This document shows, piece after piece, positions 1-17,980 of a DNA stretch of 17,980 nt (positions within the stretch are counted from its first letter, which is position 1; the number at the start of each line of letters is the position of its first letter). The stretch comes from Fonticula alba ATCC 38817 (taxonomy: Eukaryota; Protista; Nucleariida). The notes beneath the pieces are model-generated. The model was not told where the DNA came from. It saw only the letters and a program-made list of their open reading frames with translations, and did no database searches. The position numbers were made by a program, and so were the translations under genes. The stretch lies in NCBI GenBank assembly GCA_000388065.2, contig KK198105.1. One strand, written 5' to 3'.

Positions 1-120
1 GACTCGAACCCATTCACAGGTTTTACCTGCTCTTTCCTAGACCTGAAAAAAAAAAAAAAATTATTAAATGTTTTTTATTTAATAAATAAAAAATCTATCA
101 GGGATTTTTTTTATGGTATC
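1..120 (-). repeat. Repeat module copy 1 (cut by window start): tRNA-like element, A15 tract, two hairpins
   Basis: Near-identical to 3929-4020 and 13847-13962. Hairpins are ttattaaat/atttaataa (61-85) and aaaaaatc/gatttttt. Confidence 0.95.
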
Positions 121-190
121 TATTAAACAAAGCAGGGAGCTGTTTTGTTTAGTTTATATTCAGTTGTTTTGGTAGTAGATTTTTTAGTTA

Positions 191-685
191 TTACGTGAGT
201 GATATTGTGTTCATGTATGTTTGTACGATTAGGTCAATGTTTAGGTTGTCATTGATTGCTTGTTTTGCAATGAATGCAGTGTATCTGTTAATATCTACCA
301 TGTTTATAATATTTGAGTGTATAGGATCATTTATTTTGTTAAGTGTTATGTTTAGGTGTTTTGAGCCCTGTTCAAAGAATTCAGCTCTATTGTATTTTAA
401 GCATGCTCTGAGCATTGATATGTCCATCGTTGCATCATACTCTTTTAATATAAGTTTAAAATTATGAGTTCCGTTTTTAATAAGCCTTTCAGCTAGTTCT
501 TTATCTTCTTTTGTCAGTTCAACTTCCCAGCTGGGGTAGCCTAAATAGTTTGTAAGATCCTGACAACTTTTGTTTAAGATATTATCAGGGTTGTTTCCTA
601 ATTCTCCAAATACTGTTGTCTCTTCTAATGTTTTATTGTTTTTTTGAATTATGTGCCTCTGTAACTTCTCATAAATTTTTATCAT
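191..685 (-). CDS. Hypothetical protein (164 aa), probably the 3' part of a decayed paralog of ORF 13977-14927
   Basis: Open frame that stays open upstream to 742. Weak colinear similarity to ORF316 (DKELAERLIKNGTHNFKLILK vs NKELTKLAIEATQNNIHQNWISYLK) with a similar distance to the C-terminus. Confidence 0.5.
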   Translation of the reverse strand: MIKIYEKLQRHIIQKNNKTLEETTVFGELGNNPDNILNKSCQDLTNYLGYPSWEVELTKEDKELAERLIKNGTHNFKLILKEYDATMDISMLRACLKYNRAEFFEQGSKHLNITLNKINDPIHSNIINMVDINRYTAFIAKQAINDNLNIDLIVQTYMNTISLT

Positions 686-728
686 TTTTTTTTTAGTTGT
701 ATTTAAAGGGTGCTTTTCTGTTATAATT

Positions 729-836
729 TTATATGATTTGGTTTATGCTCATGGGTAGCTTTTTAAGTTTCTGGTGTATGGCTACAATTTCTCTCAGTTT
801 GGTGTAACCTTGGTTATAACAGCTTATTGAGTTCAT
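729..836 (-). pseudogene. 35-codon fragment resembling the middle of ORF316, out of frame with ORF164
   Basis: MNSISCYNQGYTKLREIVAIHQKLKKL aligns by eye with ORF316 MNSHMNSYKTAGLLKASEIIEWLDKLDNKL. Confidence 0.45.
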
Positions 837-1702
837 ATTAATAATATTTTGTTAAGGGTGTTTATATGGAGAGTTTATACCCCTGATTTATTTAGCTAAA
901 ATAGGCGTGTGTATTTCTTATATAGATCAGGGCCTTTATAGCATCTATTTTATAAATTTTCTGGGTCTGAACTTATTTTAGCTGAATTGTATTTTATGCT
1001 ATATTTATAAAATAGGTTTATGTCTAAATAATTATAATGTTATTATAATTATTTTATGTTAAAATCAGATGTGAATATGCCTCTCTTACTCCCTAAAATA
1101 TTACTTAAATTAAATGATTGTTTTTATAGTGATCGTTTATAATTACAGGTTAATATTTTAATATTAACTCTTTGTATATATTTCATAGCTGTAAATTCCA
1201 TATGATTTAGCATAGTTCCTTCATGTTAAAATATTCTTTAATCGACTCTAAATTTTTAAACTGAGGTATTTCCTCTAATAATCCTTATTTCTTTAAATTA
1301 TATAATTAATAGAAAATTAACCTAAAAATTATTTATTATACTACATTATTGCACTAATGAACCTAAACTCCTCATTAATTTAAGTACTCTCTGAAAAGCT
1401 GCAGTTAGGGAGACAAGTACTACTCTTATTGAGGTGATATAGGATATATTTTTAAATATTAAATAAATTACACACCTAGATAAATTTCTAGGAATAAATA
1501 TATAAAGCACATTATAAAATTATAGAAGTTTAAGTTATCCATTGTTTTCATTATAAATTTTATTTCTGAACGATCGCACATACATTATGTTTATTTTAGA
1601 AAGTACACGAGCTATAAACATAAGAAAAGCATGGTCATGACCAAACTCTATTAATATATAGAAAATCATTAGTTTTTAACATAATATAAATTTAATTAAT
1701 AA

Positions 1703-2407
1703 TTAAATTTTACTAGTAGAGCATATTAGAGTATATAATATAATAGATTCATATATAACTGTAGCAGCTACAGTTATAATAATCATAGCTGTAATATCAG
1801 GTGGTGTACATAATGAGCATATAATAGCTATGATTATAATAGCTTTTCTGTTTATGATATAGTTAATTTTTATTAGATTAAAATTAACTAGGTATGATAT
1901 TAGACTGATACATACAGATATTATGATTGTGAACACAAGGAAAACATTTAAGTAGTGGAGGTACATGTTTGCTGAGGGTATTATGTTAATTAAGTTATAG
2001 TTATTATTATTTATTATTTTGTATATTTGATATAATAATATAAATAATAAATAGTATATTATGTAGTACATATAGTATACTAAACAGAACTGGTTTAAAA
2101 TCCTGTAATATACTTTTTTGAATTCTATAGCTGTAACCATAGGCTTTATAAAAGCATACATTATAACAACAGCATATGGTGCTATAATATAGATTGGTAG
2201 AATAAGACTCAAGCTAAAGTAGCTGTATAATAGCTTCATGAAATCTGTGGTTAATAGTGTATTATTCACCATTTTCCAAGTATAGAGATTTAATATAAAT
2301 GATGAGTTATAAAATGTAATAAGAGACAATAAAAAATACGCCAGAATTAAATAAGCCATCCTCGCTGAGACTTCTTTTATATAATAATAATATAAAATAA
2401 AATTTAT
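1703..2407 (-). CDS. tatC: Twin-arginine translocase subunit TatC (MttB); start probably non-AUG, upstream of the ATG at 2359
   Basis: Multi-TM hydrophobic protein with C-terminal CSLCTPPDITAM...IYESII (TatC TPPD/E motif) and YAFIKPM. The frame is open upstream to a TAA at 2417-2419 and encodes YYYYIKEVSARMAYL, resembling the N-terminal E-x-x-x-R motif. The start position is inferred. Confidence 0.9.
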   Translation of the reverse strand: MNFILYYYYIKEVSARMAYLILAYFLLSLITFYNSSFILNLYTWKMVNNTLLTTDFMKLLYSYFSLSLILPIYIIAPYAVVIMYAFIKPMVTAIEFKKVYYRILNQFCLVYYMYYIIYYLLFILLYQIYKIINNNNYNLINIIPSANMYLHYLNVFLVFTIIISVCISLISYLVNFNLIKINYIINRKAIIIIAIICSLCTPPDITAMIIITVAATVIYESIILYTLICSTSKI

Positions 2408-3657
2408 TTTAAATTTTTATCACTGGTAGCCATATAAAATGTTAAACATTCTTATAAAACAACCCAATATAACTAATTAATAATAAAGCTAAATATCTCA
2501 CAAGAATAAATACCCCTAAAATCTATAATCATAAGCAATCATAACCCATAAAGATTCAAATAGACTTATACAATTTGTTAAAAAATAACCACCTCAGCTA
2601 GCCGAGGCTCTAGTTCATGATCAACCTATTTAGTGATGTACCTAACTTAAAATTAAAAATCTTAATAGATTCTTAATAATAAGAATTTGAGTAAGCCGAT
2701 GTTTCTAAGCATATCTAAATTTCTCTTTATTTTATAACAATAGGACTTTTAGAAAAATGATTCTGATACTTCATTTTTCTAGGGTTTAAAAATACTATAT
2801 TTTTTTTTAATCAAGAATATAGTATCTAGTTTATAATAATATATTCTTATACTAGTCAAATCTAGAATATTATTATATAGAAATAGCACTAAACCCCAAT
2901 AGACTACAAGACATGAAGATTATAAAGGACTACATTACAAACCTCCCCTATAAAAATAACATTTTAATCACAATGTAGAATTTATCAAGGACTAAATATA
3001 ACTATATTTACATTCATACTGATAATTTGTAAATAAGTCAATATTTACATAATTATGTAAATAACTTATTTACATAAGTTATTTTATAATACCTCTTCTT
3101 TCTCTTGTAGCCAAAGACTAGAGCACAGATAAGTACCATATAAACTACTATTTCAATATTAATAGAATTCAATTCATAAACTTTGGATTTTATAGCTAAA
3201 TGTCAGCTTCTTTCTATTTTTAACAACATGATATTTCAATATTAAGATTACAAAGTAAAGGATACACATAGTTAAGCTATTATACATAATATTTAAATAA
3301 CAAAAGAAGATAAATTAGACTACAAACCCTATGAATAAAAAAAAAAAAAAAAACCTTATCATGATCAGTTAAACATTACTAAACATTATTAATATTGAAA
3401 TATCAGTAGATATGACTAGAAAAGACTAATATAGTTATTTATAACTATATCACATATAAAAACTAAAGGATATAATATAACATCCAGCAAACAAACATAC
3501 ATATAAACTAACTAAGCCATTCAACTTTGAATAACTCTAATTTTTTAAATTTAGAGCTAAATTTAAAAATACTAAATTAGTATAGATTTTACTCTATTTC
3601 ATATACTCATAAAACCTAATAATTTAAAAAGGTAAGTACTATACATCATTAATAAAA

Positions 3658-3683
3658 TGGATAATTTAGTACTAAATTATCCA
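3658..3683. repeat. Perfect 26-bp palindrome tggataatttagtactaaattatcca
   Basis: Identical to its own reverse complement. Confidence 0.95.
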
Positions 3684-3900
3684 ATAAACACAATTTAATA
3701 TAAAAAACCCCCTAAAAATATTATAAACACTACCCACCACTAAAGCACTACTGATTTAACACTAAAACTTATAAATTAAAACAACCTTAACAAGACAAAA
3801 TTAAATAAAACATTCTAATATAAATTTTATAAATAATCATAAACTAAATCGGCCTGTACAGGCCTGGACCAAAAACCATACACTCCATCACTGAACAACA

Positions 3901-4040
3901 ACAACAAAGAATTATGATACAGGCAAGGGACTCGAACCCATTCACAGGTTTTACCTGCTCTTTCCTAGACCTGAAAAAAAAAAAAAAATTATTAAATGTT
4001 TTTTATTTAATAAATAAAAATTCCTAAATAGGAATTTTTT
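3901..4040 (-). repeat. Repeat module copy 2 with a different distal hairpin (aaaaattcct-aaat-aggaattttt)
   Basis: Direct sequence identity with copies 1 and 3 up to about 4020. Confidence 0.95.
3918..3975 (-). ncRNA. 58-nt tRNA-like element (t-element-like): canonical T-arm, reduced D-arm, non-canonical anticodon arm
   Basis: Minus strand TTCAGGT-CTAGGAAA-GAGC-AGGTAAAACCT-GTGA-ATGGG-TTCGAGT-CCCTT-GCCTGTA. The acceptor-like stem pairs 6 of 7. Expression is not shown. Confidence 0.6.
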
Positions 4041-4287
4041 ATATAGTATGTCTGCATGATTGATGAACAATCAATTATAATTGATTAACTATTAGATAGT
4101 GAGACTCTATTAAGAGTTAACTCTATTAATTCTTTCATATTTTATACTTGATCTACACCAGCCCTTGTTTCTGGCTTATTTCTATTAATTGCTGCAGTAT
4201 TTTCACTTAACTATAAACCTCTTAGAGTAATAGCCTTAATAAAACTAATCAATGTTATAATTGGGGATATACAGTCTTTTACATGGC

Positions 4288-4731
4288 CTATGAATTATCA
4301 TTTTTATTACTATCACTTAATAATTCTGGATTTTCATCCTTTATAATTTTAAAAATTCTTTCTTTATTAAAATTTATAAATTCATCAGAGTTTTTAATTA
4401 AATCTAAACTCTGATAAGGAATAGAGAGTTTTTCTTTCGCAACCATACCAAACTGTGGCTTTTGCTGACCTACTAAATTGGATTCTTTACTTATCAAATT
4501 TGCAGGGTTCCTGGCTGTTGATACGCTGGTACATTGCATTAAAATAGTTAGCCTATCTACTACCTTTTCTGCTGAATCACCGTCTTTTAATATAAAGGGA
4601 TGGTTTACATCCAGCTTTAAAGGTTCTAAAATTGCTTTAAAGTCTTCTCTTTTAGAATTTTTAATAAACGCTCCACATAATTTACTAGAACTACTGATTG
4701 AATAAGACCTTTTTATTAAATTACTAATCAT
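4288..4731 (-). CDS. Hypothetical protein (147 aa), gene B of the unknown two-gene cassette
   Basis: Intact ORF with an ATGA overlap with ORF289. A homologous decayed copy lies at 7686-8169. Confidence 0.7.
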   Translation of the reverse strand: MISNLIKRSYSISSSSKLCGAFIKNSKREDFKAILEPLKLDVNHPFILKDGDSAEKVVDRLTILMQCTSVSTARNPANLISKESNLVGQQKPQFGMVAKEKLSIPYQSLDLIKNSDEFINFNKERIFKIIKDENPELLSDSNKNDNS

Positions 4732-5597
4732 ATAATATATTTACCTGTAGCTATTAAACCCCACAAAATAACCCTACATAAAATAAGTAACCCAGGAATA
4801 AGCCTCCATCTTTCACTAAAAGACCTAGCCCTTAAATGATTACTACTATATGCCAGCCATAAATTTCCAAGTGGAATACAAAAAGAGTGAGAGTACCCTC
4901 TTTTAATCCCCTCATCTGTTAACTCAAGCACTATAGCGCCAATAGACACTGACCCATTTGATAAAACTTTAGCATCCCTACCATAAACATTAACAATCTC
5001 TTTCATCTCATCTAAATTCAAAACTATATATTCTTCAAAAGATACAAGGTATAACCTAATCAACCAAGCAATAAAACTTAAAGGCAAAAAGGAGACAATA
5101 AACATAGAACTAACTTTATTAAAAATAAACAAATAAAAAAAAAACAAACTCAAAAATGGTAAAATAAAAAAAACACAAAACTTAAAAAGGCTAAAACAAC
5201 CCTGCCTAAAGGTATCCTCCCCTAAAAACCAAACCAAACGCCTAGAAAACTTCAAATATAAACCCTTAAATAGTAACATAACTAAATAATCAAAACCTTT
5301 ACTAGCCGAAGGAAAAACAAACCCCCTCATACTAAAAAGACCTGGTTTAAAATACCCCAAAATCTTTATCAAACCATATACAACCAAAATAAAAATCACA
5401 ATAATAACATAATAATAATACTTATTATTATAGTCCGATGAAACTTCAGATATATAAACTGGTTGTATTTTAGATATATAAATTATTCCAATTATATACA
5501 TCAAAAATTTAACTATAAATAAAATAATAGATAAAATCGGGGCTATCATGTTTTCATATAAGGCTTTTAACTCCATTAAATCTAACCTATTATACAT
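4728..5597 (-). CDS. Hypothetical multi-pass membrane protein (289 aa), gene A of the unknown two-gene cassette
   Basis: Long intact ORF with several hydrophobic segments. A homologous decayed copy lies at 6822-7689. Confidence 0.75.
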   Translation of the reverse strand: MYNRLDLMELKALYENMIAPILSIILFIVKFLMYIIGIIYISKIQPVYISEVSSDYNNKYYYYVIIVIFILVVYGLIKILGYFKPGLFSMRGFVFPSASKGFDYLVMLLFKGLYLKFSRRLVWFLGEDTFRQGCFSLFKFCVFFILPFLSLFFFYLFIFNKVSSMFIVSFLPLSFIAWLIRLYLVSFEEYIVLNLDEMKEIVNVYGRDAKVLSNGSVSIGAIVLELTDEGIKRGYSHSFCIPLGNLWLAYSSNHLRARSFSERWRLIPGLLILCRVILWGLIATGKYII

Positions 5598-5696
5598 AAA
5601 TATAAATCTAATAGTAAAATAACTAAATCTAAATTTTGATCCACAACTGAATTAATCACTAACAACCCACACTAGTGTCTCACTAGCTGGAACATA

Positions 5697-5734
5697 CACA
5701 AATAAAATATTTTTCATAAAAAAAAATTTTATAA
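5697..5734 (-). repeat. 38-bp exact copy of the start region of ORF731
   Basis: cacaaataaaatatttttcataaaaaaaaattttataa is identical to 17943-17980. Confidence 0.95.
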
Positions 5735-5917
5735 TTAAAACAAACTATAATATAAATACTTAAAAAACAAATCTCATTTAAAAAAATGAAATATAAATTA
5801 TATTGTGTGGCCTAAAAGCAATATTAAGAGATAGGTAATATCTGAGCATGTGTGTGTGCGAAAGATACATCCATAAACTATCATAGTGGTATGCTACGAT
5901 CAAAAGATCGGGAGCAT

Positions 5918-5989
5918 TGGGCTTAGTAGGAATCGAACCCACGTAGTATCCATCATGAGTGGAACGTTTTACCACTAAACTATAAGCCC
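5918..5989 (-). tRNA. trnI: tRNA with CAU anticodon, probably Ile (lysidine type), otherwise elongator Met
   Basis: GGGCTTA/TAAGCCC acceptor, loop CTCATGA, T-loop TTCGATT. It lacks initiator features. The GGGCTTATAGTTTA 5' end resembles organellar trnI(cau). Confidence 0.8.
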
Positions 5990-5991
5990 AA

Positions 5992-6076
5992 TACCCACTA
6001 TTGGACTCGAACCAATACTTCATAAACTGAAAACAGATTTTAAGTCTGTCGTGTCTGCCAGTTCCACCAAGCGGGC
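5992..6076 (-). tRNA. trnL: tRNA-Leu(UAA)
   Basis: GCCCGCT/AGTGGGT acceptor, ACAGA-CTTAAAA-TCTGT anticodon arm, long variable arm, TTCGAGT T-loop. Confidence 0.96.
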
Positions 6077-6081
6077 TATTT

Positions 6082-6260
6082 TTTGAATAACAACATAACT
6101 AATAATTTCCTAACAGGGCAAGATACGACAATCTCTTCAGGATTAGGAAATTCCTACGTTATAGCCTAAATAAATGCTATTATATTAGAAGCTTAAATCT
6201 GTTCGACACTAGATCGTAAAGGAATAGTAAAATAAATTAGACTGAATGGGGGTTATTTAA
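6082..6260 (+). ncRNA. rnpB: Candidate reduced mitochondrial RNase P RNA
   Basis: CR-I-like AGGAAATTCC (6145-6154), CR-IV-like AGtaaaAT (6226-6233), CR-V-like GACTGAATGGGGGTTAT (6240-6256). P4 AATTCCTA/TGGGGGTT forms 8 pairs including 3 G-U; P2 is TAATTT/AAATTA. Ends are approximate. Confidence 0.55.
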
Positions 6261-6272
6261 CTTTATAAATAA

Positions 6273-6344
6273 GAGTTTATAGCTCAGTGGTAGAGCAGCG
6301 GACTTTTAATCCGTTGGTCGCAGGTTCGAGTCCTGTTAAACTCA
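6273..6344 (+). tRNA. trnK: tRNA-Lys(UUU)
   Basis: GAGTTTA/TAAACTC acceptor, GCGGA-CTTTTAA-TCCGT anticodon arm, canonical D and T arms. Confidence 0.97.
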
Positions 6345-6346
6345 TT

Positions 6347-6429
6347 GAGGGTGTGGCTGAGCGGTTTAAAGCAATAGACTGTAAATCTATCCACGAATGT
6401 GAGCATGGGTTCGAATCCCATCGCCCTCA
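6347..6429 (+). tRNA. trnY: tRNA-Tyr(GUA)
   Basis: GAGGGTG/CGCCCTC acceptor, ATAGA-CTGTAAA-TCTAT anticodon arm, long variable arm. Confidence 0.97.
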
Positions 6430-6685
6430 AATAGATAATATATTAATAATCTTCCAGATAATATAGCCATTATATATTATATTTTATGCCACAAGTAGAT
6501 TTATTAACTTTTTTTAATCTTTCTTTTATGTTTTGTGTATTTTTTACAATTAGTTATAACATGATATATTCATATTGTGTTAATATGGAAAAAGTATCAT
6601 TAGTTAGAGAAGTTTTATCTAATTCTAATAAAAATTAACTAAATTTAAGAACTAATATTAACAAAATATAAGGAGGAAACTCCAT

Positions 6686-6757
6686 TGAGGAATAGCCAAG
6701 TGGTAAGGCAATGGATTTTGATTTCATGACGCATGGGTTCGAATCCCATTTTCTCAA
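6686..6757 (+). tRNA. trnQ: tRNA-Gln(UUG)
   Basis: TGAGGAA/TTTCTCA acceptor, ATGGA-TTTTGAT-TTCAT anticodon arm, ATGGG-TTCGAAT-CCCAT T-arm. Confidence 0.96.
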
Positions 6758-6768
6758 ACTAAAATTAT

Positions 6769-6823
6769 GCGGGCTTAGCTCAGTTGGTAGAGCACCAGAT
6801 TGTGATTCTGTTGGTCATGGGTT
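6769..6823 (+). pseudogene. trnH: tRNA-His(GUG) truncated in the T-loop
   Basis: Canonical through GCGGGCT, D-arm, CCAGA-TTGTGAT-TCTGT and ATGGG-TT, then unrelated sequence. No 3' T-stem or acceptor strand was found in the window. Confidence 0.88.
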
Positions 6824-7689: not shown

Positions 7690-8169
7690 GAATAAAACAA
7701 TTACTGGGGGGGTTTTAATTCAGCTAAGGTATTAAACAGTAATATTTCTATTATTAATAAAAATAAACAAATAATCTACACCCCTCCATTCAATAAAGGC
7801 AAACTACTAACTAATCATCGCCTTCAAACATTACCAATTAATGAGGAGTATTGTATTGTCCTAGGACAATAGACATCAAATTTACCAATAAATCAATTAG
7901 GGATTAAGCTTGGTGCTATAAATATTGATGGAGAAAAAAAAAATCAATACATCGTGCTGCTATTAGCTTTTACTTGAGTAAAAGCTAGTCATTTGAAAAT
8001 CTATGGGACTTCTAGTTCTAAAAATTTTAATAAACTACACGGGTCTAATATTTTAGATCTCTTTATAAACTATGCTATACCGATAATTGATTCAAAAAAC
8101 TCTGAAATAACACCTGCAGAATTAACAGACTTAAACCCTGAAATAACAGACGAGGGAGAAATAGAATAG
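7686..8169 (+). pseudogene. Decayed paralog of ORF147 (cassette gene B')
   Basis: Same ATGA overlap. Matches KLLTNH/KLDVNH, VLGQ*TS/ILMQCTS, GEKKNQY/GQQKPQF, NPEI/NPEL. Frameshift in G7 (7706-7712); stops at 7870 and 7975. Confidence 0.75.
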
Positions 8170-8232
8170 CCACTTACTATTAACAGGAAATACACCAATA
8201 GAATAAAAAAACATTAAAATAATTTTTTTAAC

Positions 8233-8626: not shown

Positions 8627-8653
8627 AATTATTTGTTGTGTATTTACTTTAGT
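8627..8653 (+). repeat. Left arm of a 27-bp inverted repeat (partner 13804-13830)
   Basis: aattatttgttgtgtatttactttagt vs reverse complement aattctttgttgtgtagttactttagt, 25 of 27 identical. Confidence 0.85.
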
Positions 8654-8770
8654 GGGGGGGGGGCTGTTTGTGTGTGGTTGTTATTAGGGTTTAGGGTTTT
8701 CTTGTTTTGTTTGTGTGGTGTTTGTGGTGGTTGTTTTTGTTTTTGTAATAATTTTTATAAAGATTATTTT

Positions 8771-9061
8771 ATGACATTTGATACTCTTTTTACTGTTTTT
8801 TTTATTCTATTGGTGTTGTCTCTTCTTTTTTTAGGGGGTTCATCATATTTGAAGGCGATAGTTTTATTGGAGGTTTGTGTTTTATTGAATTTTATGTATT
8901 TATCTTTTCAGGTGTCGTTATTTGGTGATCTAGCTGGTTTATCGTTTTTATTTTATGTTTTAGCGGTGGCGGCTAGTGAGACATCGGTAGGTTTTGCGTT
9001 GTTGGTTGCTTATTACAAAAATGTTGGGTCTATTTCTTTTAGTCCTTTATCAAGAAATTAA
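8771..9061 (+). CDS. nad4L: NADH dehydrogenase subunit 4L
   Basis: 96 aa with LLEVCVLLN and VLAVAASETSVGFALLVAYY (Nad4L A-A-x-E-x-x-x-G motif). ATG at 8771; the stop overlaps the nad5 ATG (TAATG). Confidence 0.93.
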   Translation: MTFDTLFTVFFILLVLSLLFLGGSSYLKAIVLLEVCVLLNFMYLSFQVSLFGDLAGLSFLFYVLAVAASETSVGFALLVAYYKNVGSISFSPLSRN

Positions 9062-10980
9062 TGTTGTTGTTGTTGTTGTTGTTGCCTTTATTATCTGGTA
9101 TTTTGACTTTATTGTTTGGGTTTTTTATAGGTAGAAATGGGGCGGTATTAATGACTGTTTTTAATATGTTTTTATTGGTGGTTTTATCATTTAAGTTATT
9201 TTTTGACGTGGGGGTTTTAGAGACTCCTATTTCTTTAGAAATTAGTGAGTGGTTTAGTTCGGGTTCATTGGTAGTTAATTGGTCTTTGCATGTGGATGCT
9301 TTGACTGTTACTATGTTGGTGGTTATTAATACTATTTCTTTTTTAGTTCATGCTTATTCTGTGTCTTATATGGAGAATGATCCTCATTTACAAAGGTTTA
9401 TGGCTTATTTGTCATTGTTTACTTTTTTTATGATAGTTTTAGTTACAGCAGACAACTTAGTTCAATCATTTGTTGGTTGGGAAGGTGTGGGGGTTATAAG
9501 CTATCTATTGATTAATTTTTGGTTTACTAGGATAAATGCTAATAAGTCGGCTATTAAGGCATTGTTGATGAATAGGGTGGGTGACTTGGGTATTTGTTTG
9601 GCTATGTATAGCTGTTTTTATACATTTGAGACATTGGATTATTCTTCGATTATGTTGTTAGTGTCTCATTCATTAGAGGATTTTATAGTTTTATTGGGTT
9701 TTGAATATAATGCTATTACTATTATATCATTTTTTATTTTTTTAGGGGCAGTTGGTAAATCTGCTCAGATTGGCTTACATACATGGTTGCCGGATGCTAT
9801 GGAGGGGCCTACTCCAGTGTCTGCACTTATTCATGCAGCTACTATGGTTACAGCAGGGGTGTTTATATTGATTAGGCTTTCAGGATTAATTGAGTATTCT
9901 ACAGCTGCATTAACGTTTATTACTATTGTGGGTGCAATAACATGTTTTTTTGCTGCATCTACTGCATTGGTTCAAAATGATATGAAGCGTATTATTGCCT
10001 TTTCTACATGTAGTCAATTAGGGTATATGGTTTTTGCATGTGGATTGTCTGGTTATACTGTTAGTTTGTTCCATTTAGCTAACCATGCTATATTTAAAGC
10101 ATTGTTGTTCTTAGCAGCAGGGGTTGTTATCCATGCGATAAATGATGAGCAAGATATAAGAAGAATGGGGGGGTTAATAAACCATTTACCATTTACTTAT
10201 TCATTAACATTGATAGGTTCATTAGCATTAATAGGTTTTCCTTATTTAACTGGGTATTATTCAAAAGATGTAATAGTTGAGTTAACTATAGCAAAACAAT
10301 CAACTCATGGATACTTTGCTTTATGGCTGGGGTCTATAACAGCTTTATTTACAGCATATTATTCTACAAGGTTATTATTTTATACTTTCTTAAATTATCC
10401 AAATAATTCTAAAAAAGTATTTAAAATAGCTCATGAAGGTTCATATCTAATGCTAATCCCATTATTTATATTAGGTATAGGAAGTATATACTCTGGATTC
10501 ATTACAAAAGAAATATTCTTAGGATGGGGATCTACATTTTGGAACAATTCTATATTTATTCATCCAGAAAACTATATTATAATAGACACACTATTCCTAC
10601 CAGACTATATGAAACTAATACCTGTATTTGCATCTTTCATAGGAATATACCTATTCATAAACATACAAATACTATACACAACACCATTTATTAAGAGCAA
10701 TAAACTTATGAAAGAAATACACAAATTCCTAAGCAATAAATGGTACTTTGACAAAATATACAACACAATAACAAAAACAATAACAAACATAGCATACAAC
10801 ATCACATACAACACAATAGACACAGGATACATAAACTCTATAACACTAGGAGCCATATACAAACACACCACAAACATAAACAAAACACAAAACAATACAA
10901 GCAAAAACCCACTAAACACACTAATCACAACAATATTCATAACAACAACACTAATCCTAACACTCTTTCTAATCAACTAA
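9061..10980 (+). CDS. nad5: NADH dehydrogenase subunit 5
   Basis: Motifs YMENDPH, FVGWEGVG, NRVGD, GKSAQIGLHTWLPDAMEGPTPVSALIHAATMVTAGV, KRIIAFSTCSQLGYM, GYYSKD. Confidence 0.99.
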   Translation: MLLLLLLLPLLSGILTLLFGFFIGRNGAVLMTVFNMFLLVVLSFKLFFDVGVLETPISLEISEWFSSGSLVVNWSLHVDALTVTMLVVINTISFLVHAYSVSYMENDPHLQRFMAYLSLFTFFMIVLVTADNLVQSFVGWEGVGVISYLLINFWFTRINANKSAIKALLMNRVGDLGICLAMYSCFYTFETLDYSSIMLLVSHSLEDFIVLLGFEYNAITIISFFIFLGAVGKSAQIGLHTWLPDAMEGPTPVSALIHAATMVTAGVFILIRLSGLIEYSTAALTFITIVGAITCFFAASTALVQNDMKRIIAFSTCSQLGYMVFACGLSGYTVSLFHLANHAIFKALLFLAAGVVIHAINDEQDIRRMGGLINHLPFTYSLTLIGSLALIGFPYLTGYYSKDVIVELTIAKQSTHGYFALWLGSITALFTAYYSTRLLFYTFLNYPNNSKKVFKIAHEGSYLMLIPLFILGIGSIYSGFITKEIFLGWGSTFWNNSIFIHPENYIIIDTLFLPDYMKLIPVFASFIGIYLFINIQILYTTPFIKSNKLMKEIHKFLSNKWYFDKIYNTITKTITNIAYNITYNTIDTGYINSITLGAIYKHTTNINKTQNNTSKNPLNTLITTIFITTTLILTLFLIN

Positions 10981-10989
10981 AAAAAAAAA

Positions 10990-11421
10990 ATGATAGTATC
11001 AAGACTAAACTATACTTCTTTTTCTTTAGTTAATACACCTAGCATAGAACACAGTGTATTCTTATACTCTGCTATTCTAGCTATGACTCTTTCTCTAGTA
11101 ATATATACTGCTGGATACTGTGTAACAAATAACCACAGAACAGACCTAAACAAAATAAGTGCTTATGAGTGTGGATACAGTCCAAACTCTCACGAATCAA
11201 ACCAATACAATGCAAACTTCATAATAATATGTCTATTATTCCTACTAATAGACCTAGAAATACTATTCCTAGTACCATTCCTATACACTGTTGACTCCAT
11301 AGACACTACCACATGGAATATCTTCATATACTGTATGTGCACTATCATAGGAGGAATAATATTCGAACTACTAACAAGCTCGTTCGGAAAACTAGGTAAA
11401 ATCATCAAACAAAACAAATAA
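10990..11421 (+). CDS. nad3: NADH dehydrogenase subunit 3 (divergent)
   Basis: KISAYECGY and LLFLLIDLEILFLVP motifs. It has an N-terminal extension and an atypical C-terminus. Confidence 0.9.
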   Translation: MIVSRLNYTSFSLVNTPSIEHSVFLYSAILAMTLSLVIYTAGYCVTNNHRTDLNKISAYECGYSPNSHESNQYNANFIIICLLFLLIDLEILFLVPFLYTVDSIDTTTWNIFIYCMCTIIGGIIFELLTSSFGKLGKIIKQNK

Positions 11422-11422
11422 A

Positions 11423-11489
11423 GAGTTTATAGCTCAACGGCTAGAGCAAGTATATACACCTGATATGGGTTCGAATCCCATTAAACTCC
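11423..11489 (+). ncRNA. tRNA-like element with trnK-identical acceptor stem and shortened anticodon region
   Basis: GAGTTTA-TA-GCTC-AACGGCTA-GAGC-A-(16 nt)-ATGGG-TTCGAAT-CCCAT-TAAACTC-C. Only 16 nt lie between position 26 and the T-stem (normally 21-22). Confidence 0.75.
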
Positions 11490-12107
11490 ATAAGAAATAA
11501 ATATTATAAACACATTGGGGATTTACAGTATGTAAAGTAATTTATCTGTACTATTTATATAACAAGATAGTACATACTCTACCTGAATTTTATGGCTAAA
11601 TCCTTGTTGTATTTTAAATTTAGTTTTTGTGATAAAAACATAAATTAATTTAATTATATAGTAGACACAACAGTCGTGTATATTATGGGATTTTTAATAT
11701 AAACTATTAAAATACCCATAGATCTATATAGCCCTATACAACAATATTATATAGGGCTAACTCTAACAATACATAAATAATGTAGTGTTTATCTAGAATA
11801 TATTCATGTGTTAAATCTTATATAAATATATAATAAATATATTATACCTAATCTAACCTGAAGAGGAATAAATAATATTATAAAATAAAATAAAAATAAT
11901 TTTTATTTTATAAATGTGTATTTTATAATACTAATACATTAATAAAACAATATAGAACCAGACATGTAAGTGTCAACCCCATATAATAAAAATAATAAGT
12001 TCTTAGGTTAGATTTAGTATGCTATAGACTAACTATCAAAACTACATAAATATTTATATTCATTAGGTAGATAAAAAACTTATTGATCTAGTACATAATA
12101 CTTATAC

Positions 12108-12139
12108 TAAATATAAATATAATATTATATTTATATTTA
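12108..12139. repeat. Perfect 32-bp AT-only palindrome
   Basis: taaatataaatataat followed by attatatttatattta. Confidence 0.9.
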
Positions 12140-13803: not shown

Positions 13804-13830
13804 ACTAAAGTAACTACACAACAAAGAATT
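13804..13830 (-). repeat. Right arm of the 27-bp inverted repeat, overlapping the left edge of module copy 3
   Basis: Reverse complement matches 8627-8653 at 25 of 27 positions. Confidence 0.85.
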
Positions 13831-13962
13831 AGTTTACAGGCAAGGGGATTCGAACCCATTCACAGGTAAACCTGCTCTTTCCTAGACCTGAAAAAAAAAA
13901 AATTATTAAATGTTTTTTATTTAATAAATAAAAAATCTATCAGGGATTTTTTTTATGGTATC
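13818..13962 (-). repeat. Repeat module copy 3 (tRNA-like element 13835-13892, A12 tract, two hairpins)
   Basis: Matches copy 1 through atggtatc and copy 2 from acaacaaagaatta. Confidence 0.95.
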
Positions 13963-13976
13963 GTCTTTGTTTATAT

Positions 13977-14927
13977 TTAATATTTGTTATTGTTTTGGTT
14001 GATAATGTTGTTTGTCCATGTAGTGTAGTTGTATTGGTGTGTTGTTTTGTTTGTTATGTTGTGTTGTAGTATGCTTCCTATTGTTGGGTTTGTTTGCCTG
14101 TTGTGGTTGTTAATGTTTGGGTTTGTTGTGTGGTTTGCTTGTAATGGAGTTAATGTTTCTCTGAGTTCATTTGGTGTGTTGTTTTGTGTTGTTTCTTGAG
14201 TGATTCCTATAGTTTTTAAATAGCTTATCCAATTTTGGTGGATGTTGTTTTGTGTTGCTTCTATTGCTAATTTTGTTAGTTCTTTGTTTGGAGTTTTTGG
14301 GTGGGCTTTTGCGTAGTTTTCTTTAACTGTTTTTGCAAATTCTTTATATTCACTCTCTGACATTAAGTTTAATGCTCGGGCAGTGCTGTTGTAGAATTGA
14401 GTGTAAGAGTGGGAGTTTGATAGGGCTGTGCAATGTAATGATTGTGAGTTGTGAAAGAATTCTACTGCTTTGTCTTCTGAATAAGTTTCGGCGTATTCTT
14501 TGAATTCTTCAGAATAAGTTGTGTCTAGTTTATTGTCTAATTTATCTAGCCATTCTATAATTTCACTGGCTTTTAATAGTCCTGCTGTTTTATATGAATT
14601 CATATGAGAGTTCATATAAATATAGTGTATTCCTTTATAAGTATCGAATCTAGTAGGAGATCCCTCAGATACTAATGTTTTATTTAAGATATAGGCTTTT
14701 TTTAAGTCTTCTGCTTGAGAGTTAAATAATAGTTGGAATAAAGATCCTTTACTCATTATGAATGAGTCGATTAATGGTCTTATTAAATAAGGCTTAGAAA
14801 TCTTTGTAGGGATTGTTTCAGGGAGTTTTTCTGTGATTATTACACTTGATATTTCACCCCAGTATCCCATATCAAAAAGGATTAGGTTAACAGTAGAAAG
14901 AAGCATATTATACAAATTAGATAGCAT
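13977..14927 (-). CDS. Hypothetical protein (316 aa) with a Thr/Asn/Gln-rich low-complexity C-terminus
   Basis: Long intact ORF in AT-rich DNA; no family recognised. Confidence 0.65.
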   Translation of the reverse strand: MLSNLYNMLLSTVNLILFDMGYWGEISSVIITEKLPETIPTKISKPYLIRPLIDSFIMSKGSLFQLLFNSQAEDLKKAYILNKTLVSEGSPTRFDTYKGIHYIYMNSHMNSYKTAGLLKASEIIEWLDKLDNKLDTTYSEEFKEYAETYSEDKAVEFFHNSQSLHCTALSNSHSYTQFYNSTARALNLMSESEYKEFAKTVKENYAKAHPKTPNKELTKLAIEATQNNIHQNWISYLKTIGITQETTQNNTPNELRETLTPLQANHTTNPNINNHNRQTNPTIGSILQHNITNKTTHQYNYTTWTNNIINQNNNKY

Positions 14928-15717
14928 TTTTTTTTTTTTTCACGTCATCATTTTTTGTAAAGCATTTTTTAGTGTTAGTTGCTTTTTCTAACATTTTAGT
15001 AGGGTGTATTCCTTCTGGTATAATTTTAACCTTAATGTTTTTTTTGATGTTGGCAATTCTATTTAATTTTTTTATGTTTAATTCTTTTGTGTTTGGTGTA
15101 GTTTTAGCTAGTTTAGGGCTTATGTTCTCTTCTTTATGGTTTTTGATAAAGAAGTTTACTAGTCTTACTCTTAGTCTTTTCATTTGTAATATTCTATTTT
15201 TTAGAGCTACTGTTCTTTTTCTAGATTTTGTAGTATAGAATTCCATGCGATTTTTTCTAGAATATATTGTTAAATGTTTAGTTTGTACATTCCTAAAATG
15301 ATTTAATGATACAAGTAGTTTTTTAGGGAGTCCATCTACTCCGTTTAAGTTTTTAATGTGTTGTAATATTAAGTTTTTATAGACTGAAAGTTTTCTTGAG
15401 CCCAACATTAAAAAATGTTTTTTAGATTGTCTTCCCATTCTAATGTTTATGTATTTACTTATTGGTAATGATTCAGATGTTAGGTACATATAGTATTCAT
15501 ATGGGCTAACACCATCATTCTCTCTTGATAATATATATACTTGATTTAAAGCATTATGCATTTTTTGACTTTTACCATTTTTTATAAAACCTTTTCTTAT
15601 TTTTTCTGTTACAAAATTATCTTGGTAATCTAAGTGTTTATAACCTGCTCCTAAGTTTATTTTTTTAGGGGAGTGACTATAAGATTTATGATTATAATTA
15701 TATATTATATTATTCAT
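14917..15717 (-). CDS. rps7: Divergent ribosomal protein S7 with N- and C-terminal extensions
   Basis: KIRKGFIKNGKSQKMHNAL resembles the S7 (M)KxGKK-helix. SPYEYY...PISKYINIRMGRQ...RKLSVYKNLI follows the S7 P-x6-R-x-G...R spacing. The protein is strongly basic. Confidence 0.7.
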   Translation of the reverse strand: MNNIIYNYNHKSYSHSPKKINLGAGYKHLDYQDNFVTEKIRKGFIKNGKSQKMHNALNQVYILSRENDGVSPYEYYMYLTSESLPISKYINIRMGRQSKKHFLMLGSRKLSVYKNLILQHIKNLNGVDGLPKKLLVSLNHFRNVQTKHLTIYSRKNRMEFYTTKSRKRTVALKNRILQMKRLRVRLVNFFIKNHKEENISPKLAKTTPNTKELNIKKLNRIANIKKNIKVKIIPEGIHPTKMLEKATNTKKCFTKNDDVKKKKNAI

Positions 15718-15767
15718 ATAATATGAAATATAATTAATTTACAAACTATATCTGGGTACTTAATAAA

Positions 15768-17963
15768 TCAATATTTAAAACATGTTGAGACTATTTCCTC
15801 ATCTATTTCTTTAAGAAGTAGACAGAGCTTATATATCTCAATGGCTTTTTTTATCTCTACTATACTGGGAGTATAGTCCATTAACACCTGCCTAGTTTTT
15901 AAACATTTTTTTAAATAATCTATTAATAAAATAATATTTTCATTCTCTATCTCTTGATAAATATTATTAAATAGCATAATGTTTAACTTTCCTTCAGCTA
16001 ATAACTTAATTAATTCTGACGTAAAACAACTATCAGGCTTTGTTAATTTAAACCATCTTAAATGTTCTAATGATTTGTTGTGTGTTTTATATTTAATTCT
16101 ATGTATCTTTTTTTCTAGATTAGATGAATCTAAGTTACTATTTACTAAAAAAGTCCTTAACTCATCTTTAGTAAAGTCTAATTCAGGAAATAACAAGTTT
16201 AAAGTGTCTTTAATAAATTCTGTATTATTATACTTATATAATTCTGTTTTTACTCTCCTTGTATAAAGAGAGTTTAAGTCTTTAGATAAAACTACATTAT
16301 TATATGTATTACAATTAATATAATTTTTCATTATATTAAATAAGAAATCCCTTCCTCTAAAAGAACCCTGCTCATAAAAAGGCTCCCCCCTTTTAGATAA
16401 AGGTTTTATCGCCCCCTTTTTAAAAAAGAATTTTGTCCTATTAGTATATTTTGTTAATCCTATTCTTTTGTTTTGTCTCAATATTCTTTTCTTTACTCTA
16501 TGGGCTATAACCCTTTTATAATGATAAGTAAATAAACAATTGGCATATTTATGGACCATTCCAAAGATAGATTTTCTTAACCTAGGTTTATTTTTAGTTA
16601 AGAAAAATTTATTACATCTTTTTCTAAGCCTCAATAGACGATATGGTTTATATCTTAATATCCTAACGTTTTTAATCTTTAATTTAATTCTTCTTTCTAT
16701 TTTTAAGTTAGCTAAATCTTGTTTATCTTGGATCTTTTGTCTAGCTGCATACTTAAAAGAAAATTTCCTTTCAACTTTTTGAAATAAAAATCCTCTAAAA
16801 TGGCCTATCCTAGCCATAGTTGAAAATGTGTTAGGATCCATTATATTAAAAGTATTAAAAAACCTGGATGTTAATCTAACATCCACTGCATTTCTTGCTA
16901 GACTATAAATAAGGCGCTTGTCCTCTAAAAAATATGGCCATTTAATATTTTTATTATTAATTTTATTATAATCTTTTAACTCTGAGAAAGAGTTAAAATA
17001 ATATAATTTAGATTTACCCTCTTTTTTAATATATATAGGATCAGGAAAAATATCTGGGTTATTTAATAAAAAATTATTAAATGATTTAGAACTTTTAGTT
17101 TTTAAATTATACTTATAACGACCTACAACATATTTAAATATAGCTAATCGTGACCTCCTCCACTTAAATTTATACTTAGATCTAATAGTTAACTTATCTT
17201 GTTTATACTTTAAAATATAAAAAGTGTTAAAAGAGCCATGAATTAAACGCTCTAATCTATAAAATAAAACTTTATCTTTTAAATTAGCCCTATTACTAAT
17301 AATTTTAAAATATTTATTAATAGCCAACCTTATAAAATGAAATAAGCCCCTATTCAACTCAGTAAACGTATTCAACCCACCAAATTTATAATTCTTTGAA
17401 TACACTTCACTAAACTCAGATTTCTTATAAGAATTATACCCAGAAATCTTTAAAAATAACTCCCTCTCATACCTCTTATACTTAATAAAAGCATGAGAAG
17501 AACCCTTACGCTCATAAAAATACCTATAATTATAAAAAAAAAAAGGATCTCTAACACCAACATACTTCAACCTCCCATATTTTTTTAAATCATATAACAT
17601 CAAAAACCTCCTCTTATTAAAAAAATTACGCCTCCTTAAAAAAAAAGGAAGCCTCCTAAATTGACCCAAAACATCTTTAGATTCACACTTCAAATTCACC
17701 AACCTACCCCTCTTATTAAAAACCCTATAAAACTTAATAGAATTAGGCAAAGAAACATGAACCCTCCTAAACTCCAACTGAGACAAATCATCAATAACAC
17801 CAGAAACCGATAAAACCGGCAAACCAACCCCACCAGCTGCCAACAAATCCAATACAGCCCCCTTCAAAAACAACAACTCCAAATCATTAAAATCCAACAA
17901 ATAAACAGACCTAATACCGTCCAAATTCAAATACTCTCCTCTCACAAATAAAATATTTTTCAT
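15768..17963 (-). CDS. Large basic (Lys/Arg-rich) hypothetical protein, possibly a highly expanded mitoribosomal protein
   Basis: 731-codon ORF directly upstream of and co-oriented with rps7. No diagnostic motif recognised. Confidence 0.7.
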   Translation of the reverse strand: MKNILFVRGEYLNLDGIRSVYLLDFNDLELLFLKGAVLDLLAAGGVGLPVLSVSGVIDDLSQLEFRRVHVSLPNSIKFYRVFNKRGRLVNLKCESKDVLGQFRRLPFFLRRRNFFNKRRFLMLYDLKKYGRLKYVGVRDPFFFYNYRYFYERKGSSHAFIKYKRYERELFLKISGYNSYKKSEFSEVYSKNYKFGGLNTFTELNRGLFHFIRLAINKYFKIISNRANLKDKVLFYRLERLIHGSFNTFYILKYKQDKLTIRSKYKFKWRRSRLAIFKYVVGRYKYNLKTKSSKSFNNFLLNNPDIFPDPIYIKKEGKSKLYYFNSFSELKDYNKINNKNIKWPYFLEDKRLIYSLARNAVDVRLTSRFFNTFNIMDPNTFSTMARIGHFRGFLFQKVERKFSFKYAARQKIQDKQDLANLKIERRIKLKIKNVRILRYKPYRLLRLRKRCNKFFLTKNKPRLRKSIFGMVHKYANCLFTYHYKRVIAHRVKKRILRQNKRIGLTKYTNRTKFFFKKGAIKPLSKRGEPFYEQGSFRGRDFLFNIMKNYINCNTYNNVVLSKDLNSLYTRRVKTELYKYNNTEFIKDTLNLLFPELDFTKDELRTFLVNSNLDSSNLEKKIHRIKYKTHNKSLEHLRWFKLTKPDSCFTSELIKLLAEGKLNIMLFNNIYQEIENENIILLIDYLKKCLKTRQVLMDYTPSIVEIKKAIEIYKLCLLLKEIDEEIVSTCFKY

Positions 17964-17980
17964 AAAAAAAAATTTTATAA
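17943..17980 (-). repeat. 38-bp repeat (ORF731 start region), identical to 5697-5734; may extend past the window end
   Basis: Exact match up to the last base of the window. Confidence 0.95.

What the first reader, a model, noticed from the sequence alone, without database searches (positions are those of the whole stretch)
1..17980. Window is segmented into G/T-to-C/A skew blocks whose ends coincide with repeats
Seen: + strand G:C counts per 60-nt line are 14:4 at 121, 2:14 at 3721, 15:4 at 9061, 1:18 at 10861, 2:17 at 13621, 16:2 at 13981 and 3:26 at 17821. Polarity ignores gene direction: nad5 (+) and ORF731-rps7-ORF316 (-) each reverse skew internally. C/A-rich tracts end at modules 2 and 3, the element after nad3 and the 38-bp repeats. 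G/T-rich tracts start at modules 1 and 3 and at 8627. Established: prolonged single-strandedness enriches G/T through deamination. Inference: each block of a few kb is copied by strand displacement, or transcribed, convergently from both ends. That implies many internal initiation sites, or formerly or actually linear subgenomic units joined at repeats.
Basis: partly seen in the sequence, partly recalled or inferred. Interest (0 to 1): 0.85.

Follow-up and report, generated by a model that had tools for sequence, protein, structure and literature searches.

The report
Sawtooth strand skew in Fonticula mitochondrial DNA
This mitochondrial DNA of the slime mould-like amoeba Fonticula alba is cut into blocks of a few kilobases whose two strands are each G/T-rich at their 5' end, a mutational footprint that ignores gene direction, resets at repeated elements and most likely marks many sites where DNA copying (or transcription) starts.

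Summary
The window is a whole mitochondrial scaffold of Fonticula alba. All seven G:C line counts are exact. Window-to-window skew is 2.5-3 times what shuffles give, and GC and TA skew co-vary (r=0.79). Coding strand and amino-acid content do not explain it. Third codon positions carry the strongest signal and reverse inside genes: nad5 goes from +0.93 to -0.93. Gene strand explains 1% of the variance and position within a block 45%.

At third positions purine content stays near 0.5, while G/(A+G) and T/(C+T) swing widely. The skew is therefore made of transitions only, as expected from deamination of an exposed strand.

The profile is a sawtooth. Abrupt C/A-to-G/T jumps sit on repeats: modules 2 and 3 at their A-run/hairpin, and a 27-nt inverted-repeat arm at 8627. 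A second F. alba scaffold shows the same pattern at an 818-nt repeat. A relative has its nad4L-nad5 block flanked by inverted repeats.

The geometry of copying inward from both ends is supported. Replication versus transcription, and many origins versus separate small replicons, remain undecided. I rate it a new variant of a known kind of signal.

The parts
1..122 (.). Module 1. Truncated by the scaffold end. Contains a tRNA-3'-half-like piece, A15 at 46-60 and an AT hairpin at 61-85. A G/T-rich tract starts here.
3899..4050 (.). Module 2. Contains the inverted motif copy at 3899-3913 (-), a tRNA-like piece, A15 at 3974-3988 and a hairpin at 3989-4013. An upward skew jump of +0.45 lies at 3987.
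13804..13970 (.). Module 3. Contains the IR arm/motif at 13804-13830 (-), a tRNA-like piece, A12 at 13891-13902 and a hairpin at 13903-13927. The sharpest upward jump (+0.87) lies at 13903, at a convergent gene junction.
8627..8770 (+). 27-nt IR arm/motif at 8627-8653, a G10 run at 8654-8663 and a G/T-rich non-coding leader before the true nad4L start at 8771. An upward jump of +0.57 lies at 8626.
5697..5734 (-). 38-bp repeat, copy 1. It is 17 nt of upstream sequence plus the first 7 codons of orf731, here opening only a 21-codon ORF upstream of orf289. The C/A-rich tract ends about 100-150 nt to its right.
17943..17980 (-). 38-bp repeat, copy 2. It holds the orf731 start codon at 17961-17963. 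The scaffold ends inside it, within the most C/A-rich tract.
11490..11612 (.). Element after nad3 and its tRNA, containing a small palindrome. The strong C/A tract ends here. Other sequencing runs continue differently after 11612.
8771..11489 (+). nad4L (8771-9061), nad5 (9061-10980), nad3 (10990-11421) and a tRNA (11423-11489). The sense strand goes from G/T-rich to C/A-rich within nad5.
13977..17963 (-). orf731 (15768-17963), orf266 (14917-15717) and orf316 (13977-14927). The sense strand goes from G/T-rich (third-position GC skew +0.94) to C/A-rich (-0.86).
191..5597 (-). Minus-strand genes orf289 (4728-5597), orf147 (4288-4731), tatC (1703-2359) and orf164 (191-685). On the sense strand orf289 is G/T-rich, while tatC and orf164 are C/A-rich.
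5917..6759 (.). Divergent junction. tRNA-Met and tRNA-Leu on the minus strand; tRNA-Lys, tRNA-Tyr, an atp8-like ORF (6486-6638) and tRNA-Gln on the plus strand. Cumulative skew reaches its minimum here.

Best explanation
The blocks are a mutational footprint. In each block of 2-7 kb, the strand whose 5' end lies at the nearer block border has accumulated A-to-G and C-to-T transitions. Both strands are therefore G/T-rich at their 5' ends, and the skew passes through zero inside the block, often inside a gene.

The most likely cause (inferred, not shown) is that DNA synthesis starts at the border elements and runs outward in both directions. Those elements are the modules, the 8627 element, the region around the 38-bp repeat and divergent tRNA cluster, and the 818-nt repeat of the second scaffold. 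The synthesis could be strand displacement, possibly primed by RNA, or recombination-dependent. Either way, the outward 5'-to-3' strand next to a border stays unpaired longest and is deaminated most.

The sequence cannot say whether the blocks are segments of one multi-origin genome or separate small replicons that share border repeats.
For: - Third-position skew reverses within genes and also in a second F. alba scaffold.
- Position within a block explains R2=0.45 of the keto-amino skew, gene strand alone 0.013.
- Third-position skew against position in block gives Spearman -0.65 for plus-strand genes and -0.79 for minus-strand genes.
- The signal is transition-only. Third-position purine fraction is 0.44-0.59 in all but one gene segment (rps13, 0.72). 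G/(A+G) runs from 0.58-0.70 down to 0.03-0.07, and T/(C+T) from 0.96-0.99 down to 0.29-0.43.
- Polarised nad5 substitutions flip with the skew. In the 5' part A>G 16 versus T>C 7; in the 3' part 2 versus 11. Fisher p=0.0045.
- Sharp upward jumps lie at the A-run/hairpin of modules 2 and 3 and of repeat R, and at the 8627 IR arm.
- The jump at module 3 sits between two convergent gene clusters, where sense transcription predicts the opposite sign.
- The 15-nt motif occurs 4 times against 0.10 expected. Three copies sit at the 5' start of G/T tracts.
- A relative has inverted repeats of at least 30 nt around nad4L-nad5 and the same reversal.
- The nad5 C-terminus is recoded toward A/C-codon amino acids only in the lineages that carry the skew.
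- Established background: leading-strand and displaced-strand G/T enrichment by deamination, and multiple polarity changes read as multiple origins (PMC3269012); sawtooth N-domains with upward jumps at origins (PMC2764438 and PMC3320577).
Against: - There is no direct evidence of initiation, single-stranded intermediates or molecule ends.
- Border elements of the two scaffolds share no sequence beyond an A-run followed by an AT hairpin.
- The 8626 jump is one-sided, and the blocks 3987-6170 and 6170-8626 fit the sawtooth poorly (r about 0.5).
- The decline is not cleanly linear. Zero crossings lie 59-84% along the sense direction in four of five units, which implies an added sense-strand component or unequal borders.
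- Block borders coincide with gene-cluster borders and with promoter-like leaders, so transcription could do the same job.
- Borders for the regression were partly chosen from the skew itself.
- Only 28.8 kb of the genome was available.
Confidence: 0.5

Rival explanations
1. Transcription alone. Each border element is a promoter, bidirectional at modules and R, inward-facing at both ends of a block. The non-template strand near each promoter is exposed in transcription bubbles or R-loops and is deaminated. Sense transcripts skew the 5' half of a block and antisense transcripts from the far border skew the 3' half.
For: - G+T excess on the non-template strand is the known sign of transcription-associated asymmetry (my own knowledge).
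- Borders coincide with gene-cluster borders.
- The 8627 motif sits 144 nt upstream of nad4L and is followed by a G10 run and a G/T leader. The 3913(-) copy faces the tatC cluster.
- A similar G9 leader precedes nad1 in L007.
- The 38-bp repeat carries a gene start.
- The relative's block has the same 30-mer facing inward at both ends.
- The one-sided jump at 8626 looks like a promoter.
Against: - It needs strong antisense transcription into orf316, rps13, orf437 and the nad5 3' end, starting from elements that lie at gene 3' ends. On the minus strand the modules look like hairpin plus U-run terminators.
- The skew at 3' ends is as strong as at 5' ends.
- No RNA data are available here.
Confidence: 0.27
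2. The blocks are, or recently were, separate linear molecules with terminal inverted repeats, replicated from both ends like adenovirus or linear plasmids. The scaffolds are assembler joins, or real recombinant joins, through shared repeats.
For: - The skew polarity and mid-block sign change are those expected for end-initiated strand displacement.
- Inverted 27-nt arms lie at 8627 and 13830, and an inverted repeat of at least 30 nt flanks the block in a relative.
- Scaffolds end inside repeats.
- There is an alternative junction at 11612.
- The related opisthokont Amoebidium has many linear mitochondrial chromosomes (PMC7194472).
Against: - The inverted arms are short.
- Most borders (modules, R) are direct repeats, not inverted ones.
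- No polymerase or terminal-protein gene was detected among the ORFs.
- L007 reads equally well as a circle or as two circles sharing R.
- There is no information on physical ends.
Confidence: 0.13
3. The skew comes from selection: coding strand, amino-acid content or codon preference.
For: Membrane-protein genes are T-rich at second codon positions on the sense strand.
Against: - The signal is strongest at third positions and reverses within single genes.
- It is present in non-coding leaders.
- Gene strand explains 1.3% of the variance.
- Amino-acid content of the nad5 tail follows the skew and differs from outgroups.
- The pattern differs between close relatives at the same gene.
Confidence: 0.03
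4. The pattern is an assembly or sequencing artefact.
For: The scaffold ends lie in repeats, and one internal join (11612) differs in other runs.
Against: Contigs from several independent runs match 6794-11612 at 99.8-99.97% identity. ORFs stay open through the skewed tracts. A second scaffold and a related species show the same pattern.
Confidence: 0.02

Closest known systems
Strand-displacement skew gradient of vertebrate mitochondrial DNA (deamination of the displaced H strand)
   Same: G+T enrichment of the exposed strand. The asymmetry is transition-type (A>G, C>T), strongest at synonymous sites, and graded with distance from the start site (PMC3269012).
   Different: Vertebrates have one origin pair, one sign over the whole genome and no reversal inside genes. 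Here the sign reverses every 2-7 kb, and third-position amplitude reaches about +/-0.9.
Multi-origin skew profiles: archaea, yeast chromosomes, plant mtDNA, and human 'N-domains' with upward jumps at origins
   Same: A sawtooth with abrupt upward jumps in G+T skew and a decline between them. Jumps of differing height are read as origins of unequal use (PMC3269012, PMC2764438, PMC3320577).
   Different: The scale is kilobases instead of 0.1-3 Mb, and the amplitude is about ten times larger. It occurs in a small organelle genome, with jumps on dispersed repeats. No origin has been mapped.
Linear replicons with terminal inverted repeats copied from both ends (adenovirus, phi29, linear mitochondrial plasmids)
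   Same: Each strand is displaced from its 5' end, so each is expected to be G/T-rich at its 5' end with a sign change mid-molecule. Short inverted repeats occur at block ends.
   Different: No physical ends, terminal protein or B-family polymerase gene were seen. Most border repeats are direct. This resemblance rests partly on my own knowledge of those systems.
Multipartite or modular mitochondrial genomes with a shared non-coding region (louse minicircles, Amoebidium linear chromosomes)
   Same: Gene cassettes are bounded by the same repeated non-coding element: R of 818 nt at 100% identity, and three copies of the module.
   Different: Separate molecules are not demonstrated. A skew sawtooth tied to the shared region has not, to my knowledge, been reported for those genomes.

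Membership tests
Deamination-driven strand asymmetry (exposed-strand model) | G and T are enriched together on one strand | tested here: met
   GC and TA skew correlate at r=0.79-0.80 in both scaffolds
Deamination-driven strand asymmetry (exposed-strand model) | The asymmetry is made of transitions and is strongest at synonymous sites | tested here: met
   Third-position purine fraction is 0.44-0.59 in all but one gene segment (rps13, 0.72), while G/(A+G) and T/(C+T) swing widely. Third positions are more skewed than first or second. The A>G versus T>C imbalance flips with the skew.
Deamination-driven strand asymmetry (exposed-strand model) | The strand is physically single-stranded for longer | not testable with these tools
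   Needs ssDNA footprinting or analysis of replication intermediates
Vertebrate-type single OH/OL strand-displacement genome | One sign of skew genome-wide with a single gradient | tested here: not met
   At least four significant upward jumps in 18 kb and two in the second scaffold
Multi-origin (N-domain-like) replication skew | Abrupt upward jumps separated by gradual declines | tested here: met
   Upward jumps are +0.87, +0.57 and +0.45 against downward steps of -0.51, -0.41 and -0.35. Per-block regression gives r=0.50-0.89.
Multi-origin (N-domain-like) replication skew | The jumps coincide with mapped initiation sites | not testable with these tools
   No replication data are available
Transcription-associated strand asymmetry | The sense (non-template) strand is G+T-rich along the transcription unit | tested here: not met
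   This holds only in the 5' halves. The 3' halves are equally strongly C/A-rich on the sense strand. Gene strand explains R2=0.013. The model could be rescued only by antisense promoters, which were not tested.
Linear replicon with terminal inverted repeats | Terminal inverted repeats at both ends of the unit | tested here: inconclusive
   There is a 27-nt inverted pair (93% complementary) at 8627 and 13830, and an inverted repeat of at least 30 nt in a relative. Other borders carry direct repeats.
Linear replicon with terminal inverted repeats | Own B-family DNA polymerase or terminal protein gene | tested here: not met
   No such Pfam or NCBIfam hit in any of the larger window ORFs tested
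Linear replicon with terminal inverted repeats | Physical DNA ends | not testable with these tools
   The scaffold ends lie in repeats and look like assembly breaks
Multipartite mitochondrial genome with a shared control region | The same non-coding element is present once per gene cassette | tested here: met
   R occupies 1-818 and 3816-4633 and begins again at 10751. Modules lie at 1, 3929 and 13846.
Multipartite mitochondrial genome with a shared control region | The cassettes exist as separate molecules | not testable with these tools
   Needs long reads or gels

The most novel reading that the evidence does not exclude
Fonticula mitochondrial DNA is built from small gene cassettes, each bounded by shared repeat elements that act as start sites. 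Every cassette is copied, or transcribed with RNA-primed copying, inward from both ends. It would be a modular, many-origin or multi-replicon organelle genome. Exposure of single strands is so mutagenic that it drives synonymous sites close to saturation and recodes protein termini.
Probability: 0.3. Interest if true: 0.8.

Novelty: new variant of a known kind. Interest (0 to 1): 0.66.

Why it matters
Skew is the standard sequence-only pointer to replication origins. Here it gives base-pair-level candidates in a protist lineage, the sister group of Fungi, whose mitochondrial replication is unstudied. The candidates are the A-run/hairpin of three modules, an 818-nt repeat and a 27-nt inverted element.

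The amplitude is extreme. Third-position GC skew runs from +0.9 to -0.9 within one gene, and a conserved respiratory protein has had its tail recoded. This makes a clear natural example of position-dependent mutation pressure overriding gene-level composition.

It also warns that phylogenies and codon models using these genes will be misled. If the blocks prove to be separate replicons, a new type of fragmented mitochondrial genome would be added within the opisthokonts.

Tried and rejected
- Genetic code 4 does not lengthen the real genes. The standard code fits.
- Rfam found only tRNAs in the window, with no rRNA or known structured element at the borders.
- Pfam and NCBIfam gave nothing for orf164, orf147, orf289, orf119, orf266, orf316, orf731, orf437 or orf131.
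- Exact-protein look-ups for orf731 and orf164 did not yield contigs reaching beyond the scaffold ends.
- An atp9 search aimed at further F. alba mitochondrial scaffolds did not identify one. Only two scaffolds, 28.8 kb in total, could be tested.
- No canonical G-quadruplex motif occurs in the G/T tracts.
- No sequence motif is shared between the window modules and repeat R, apart from an A-run followed by an AT hairpin.
- The 15-nt border motif is absent from L007.
- The upward jumps at 10994 and 14927 fall on homopolymer runs at gene junctions. At 10994 the cause is probably an unconstrained gene tail abutting a constrained gene start, because third-position GC skew changes little there. At 14927 the third-position skew does change, but the estimate is noisy.
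- A resection-at-breaks model was rejected because it predicts the opposite polarity at sharp switches.
- Literature searches found no description of F. alba mitochondrial skew.


Full report
**What the window is.** The window is the whole 17,980-nt scaffold KK198105.1 of assembly GCA_000388065.2. A preprint names that assembly as Fonticula alba (10.1101/2023.12.07.570557). The scaffold is mitochondrial and uses the standard code.
- Plus strand: nad4L (true start 8771 by homology), nad5 (9061-10980), nad3 (10990-11421) and an atp8-like ORF (6486-6638).
- Minus strand: tatC (1703-2359).
- Six tRNAs.
- Unassigned ORFs: orf164, orf147, orf289, orf119, orf316, orf266 and orf731.

These assignments rest. 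Pfam and NCBIfam give no support for calling orf266 'rps7'.

- In 300-nt windows the SD of GC skew is 0.27 and of TA skew 0.21. Shuffles give 0.11 and 0.067.
- The two skews correlate at r=0.79, so this is a G+T versus A+C asymmetry.
- Contigs assembled from other public sequencing runs match window 6794-11612 at 99.8-99.97% identity. The sequence is therefore not an artefact.

**It is not coding strand or amino-acid content.**
- Third codon positions carry the strongest signal and reverse inside genes. In nad5, third-position GC skew goes from +0.93 to -0.93 and TA skew from +0.37 to -0.84.
- Along the minus-strand run orf731-orf266-orf316, sense-strand third-position GC skew goes from +0.94 to -0.86.
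- Over both available scaffolds, position within a block explains 45% of the variance of 200-nt keto-amino skew. Gene strand alone explains 1.3%.
- Third-position skew against position in block gives Spearman -0.65 for plus-strand genes and -0.79 for minus-strand genes.
- The last 119 residues of nad5 hold 45% A/C-codon amino acids (T, N, K, P, H, Q) in F. alba and 46% in its closest relative. Outgroups hold 20-28%. The protein follows the skew, not the reverse.

**Shape and borders.** The profile is a sawtooth on the plus strand: abrupt C/A-to-G/T jumps with declines between them. By symmetry, each strand is G/T-rich at its own 5' end in every block. The largest upward jumps (W=300) are listed below. 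No shuffle exceeded 0.36.

| Position | Jump | Location |
|---|---|---|
| 13903 | +0.87 | Border between the A12 run and the AT hairpin of module 3 |
| 8626 | +0.57 | First base of a 27-nt inverted-repeat arm |
| 3987 | +0.45 | The same A-run/hairpin border in module 2 |
| 10994 | +0.42 | nad5 tail abutting the nad3 start; largely an effect of constraint |

- Two of the top three jumps fall inside the two internal copies of the only long repeat family. Those copies cover about 1% of the sequence.
- Module 3 lies between two convergent gene clusters. Sense transcription there would predict the opposite sign.
- Weaker inflections lie near the 38-bp repeat and divergent tRNA cluster (5700-6270) and after nad3 (about 11500).
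- Module 1 and the second 38-bp copy sit at scaffold ends and can be seen from one side only.

**The rest of the genome and relatives.**
- A second F. alba scaffold was recovered: KK198107.1, locus L007, 10,845 nt, with all genes on one strand. It shows the same pattern twice. One run is nad1-nad4-rps13, with third-position GC skew from +1.00 to -1.00. The other is rns-atp6-nad2-orf437, from +0.83 to -0.83.
- Both upward jumps in L007 lie in an 818-nt perfect direct repeat, R (1-818 = 3816-4633). R begins again at the scaffold end. The jumps sit at an A13 run plus a 12-bp hairpin.
- A relative at 83% nucleotide identity (L008) has the same nad5 reversal. One at 80% (L009) has only the 5' part. 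L001 (76% nad5 protein identity) and Nuclearia-like contigs show little skew: keto-skew SD 0.10-0.13 against 0.22-0.26 in F. alba.
- The trait is therefore recent and lineage-specific.

**Nature of the bias.**
- At third positions the purine fraction is 0.44-0.59 in all but one gene segment (rps13, 0.72).
- G/(A+G) falls from 0.58-0.70 at the 5' ends of gene clusters to 0.03-0.07 at their 3' ends.
- T/(C+T) falls from 0.96-0.99 to 0.29-0.43.
- The skew is therefore made of A/G and C/T exchanges only. This is the signature of adenine and cytosine deamination on an exposed strand.
- Parsimony-polarised nad5 changes agree. A>G versus T>C is 16:7 in the G/T-rich part and 2:11 in the C/A-rich part (p=0.0045).

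**Anatomy of the borders.**
- Modules (1-122, 3899-4050, 13804-13970) hold a piece resembling a tRNA 3' half, a small GC hairpin, an A12-15 run and a 9-10-bp AT hairpin. Read on the minus strand, they look like hairpin plus U-run terminators. Each lies 3' of a minus-strand ORF.
- A 15-nt motif occurs at 8627(+), 13830(-) and 3913(-). That is 4 hits in all against 0.10 expected. Each of these three copies sits at the 5' start of a strongly G/T-rich tract on the strand on which it reads.
- At 8627 the motif is followed by a G10 run and a G/T-rich leader before nad4L. A G9 leader likewise precedes nad1 in L007.
- In L008 the two contig ends are exact reverse complements over 30 nt, the overlap length I assume for this assembler (k-1). 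An inverted repeat of at least 30 nt therefore flanks the nad4L-nad5 block, at the position homologous to 8627.
- The border elements of the two F. alba scaffolds share no sequence beyond an A-run followed by a hairpin.

**Mechanism.**
- Shown: a position-dependent, strand-symmetric, transition-type mutation pressure that resets at repeated elements.
- Inferred: synthesis starts at the borders and moves outward both ways, leaving the outward 5'-to-3' strand unpaired longest next to the border. This would be replication by strand displacement, possibly RNA-primed, or recombination-dependent replication. It is the polarity known from bacterial leading strands and the vertebrate H strand (PMC3269012). 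The shape is that known from human N-domains (PMC2764438, PMC3320577).
- Main rival: transcription-only exposure from inward-facing promoters. It fits because borders coincide with gene-cluster borders and some carry promoter-like leaders. It requires strong antisense transcription that cannot be checked here.
- The sequence also cannot tell a multi-origin genome from separate small replicons or linear units with terminal repeats.
- Several facts keep the modular reading open: scaffold ends in repeats, the perfect R copies, an alternative junction at 11612 seen in four other runs, and gene order scrambled relative to L001.

**Caveats.**
- Only 28.8 kb of the genome was available.
- Block borders used in the regression were partly chosen from the skew. 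Random borders reached at most R2=0.38, against 0.49 observed in the window.
- Short blocks fit poorly, and the decline is not cleanly linear.
- Zero crossings are shifted toward the 3' side of gene clusters. This suggests an added sense-strand component.
- No paper describing this pattern in Fonticula was found in the searchable library. That does not prove none exists.

Noticed in passing
window 11612; L003:2826-4307; also L011, L012, L013: Contigs from four other sequencing runs match the window up to 11612, after nad3 and its tRNA. They then continue with a different 1.5-kb sequence that ends in a module-like piece, instead of window 11613-13845. This is strain variation, co-existing isomers or a mis-join in the scaffold.
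   Followed up: partly
L007:1-818, 3816-4633, 10751-10845: The second F. alba mitochondrial scaffold carries an 818-nt direct repeat at 100% identity, and the repeat starts a third time at the scaffold end. The scaffold could be one circle, two circles sharing the repeat, or a concatemer.
   Followed up: partly
window 5697-5734 and 17943-17980: The 38-bp repeat is 17 nt of upstream sequence plus the first seven codons of orf731. The copy at 5697-5734 opens only a 21-codon ORF upstream of orf289. It looks like a duplicated 5' end or promoter region, or a recombination scar.
   Followed up: partly
window 13846-13890, 3929-3973, 1-45 (minus strand); L007:222-278 and 4037-4093: There are truncated tRNA-like pieces at the borders. 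The modules carry a T-arm plus acceptor 3' half without a 5' half. Repeat R carries a 57-nt tRNA-like element (Rfam tRNA, 45 bits) that seems to lack the anticodon arm. They may be RNA processing signals.
   Followed up: no
window 8633-8770: The mechanical nad4L ORF starts at a TTG at 8633, but homology with the relative begins at the ATG at 8771. The first 46 'codons' are a G/T-rich leader with a G10 run and a telomere-like TTAGGGTTTAGGG.
   Followed up: partly
window 10605-10976 (-), 14029-14199 (+), 195-467 (+): Long antisense ORFs inside the most skewed tracts are by-products of composition. Stop codons need both T and a purine (A or G), and G/T-only or A/C-only sequence rarely supplies that combination on either strand. 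They should not be annotated as genes.
   Followed up: no
window 10979-10990, 14927-14940 (-); L007:9138-9150: Homopolymer A runs of 12-14 nt on the sense strand lie directly before the start codons of nad3, orf316 and orf437. Small upward skew steps coincide with two of them.
   Followed up: no
window 8233-8466 (orf77, palindrome 8404-8437); L003:3614-4006 (orf131): orf77 contains a 34-nt palindrome. It has a paralogue (about 45-49% identity by tblastx) in inverted orientation in the alternative sequence of other runs. It may be a dispersed or mobile ORF family. No family hit was found.
   Followed up: partly
window 6273-6759 and 8771-10980 versus L001:6898-11899; L007:4654-8837: The relative L001 has rns, tRNA-K, tRNA-Y, atp8, tRNA-Q, atp6, nad2, nad4L and nad5 in one run. 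In F. alba this run is broken into three pieces on two scaffolds, with novel ORF-poor sequence inserted (6760-8626).
   Followed up: partly
window 700-1700, 2400-3900, 11613-13845: About 5 kb has no ORF, no Rfam hit and no similarity to the relative or to the second scaffold. Its function is unknown, and it follows the regional skew.
   Followed up: partly
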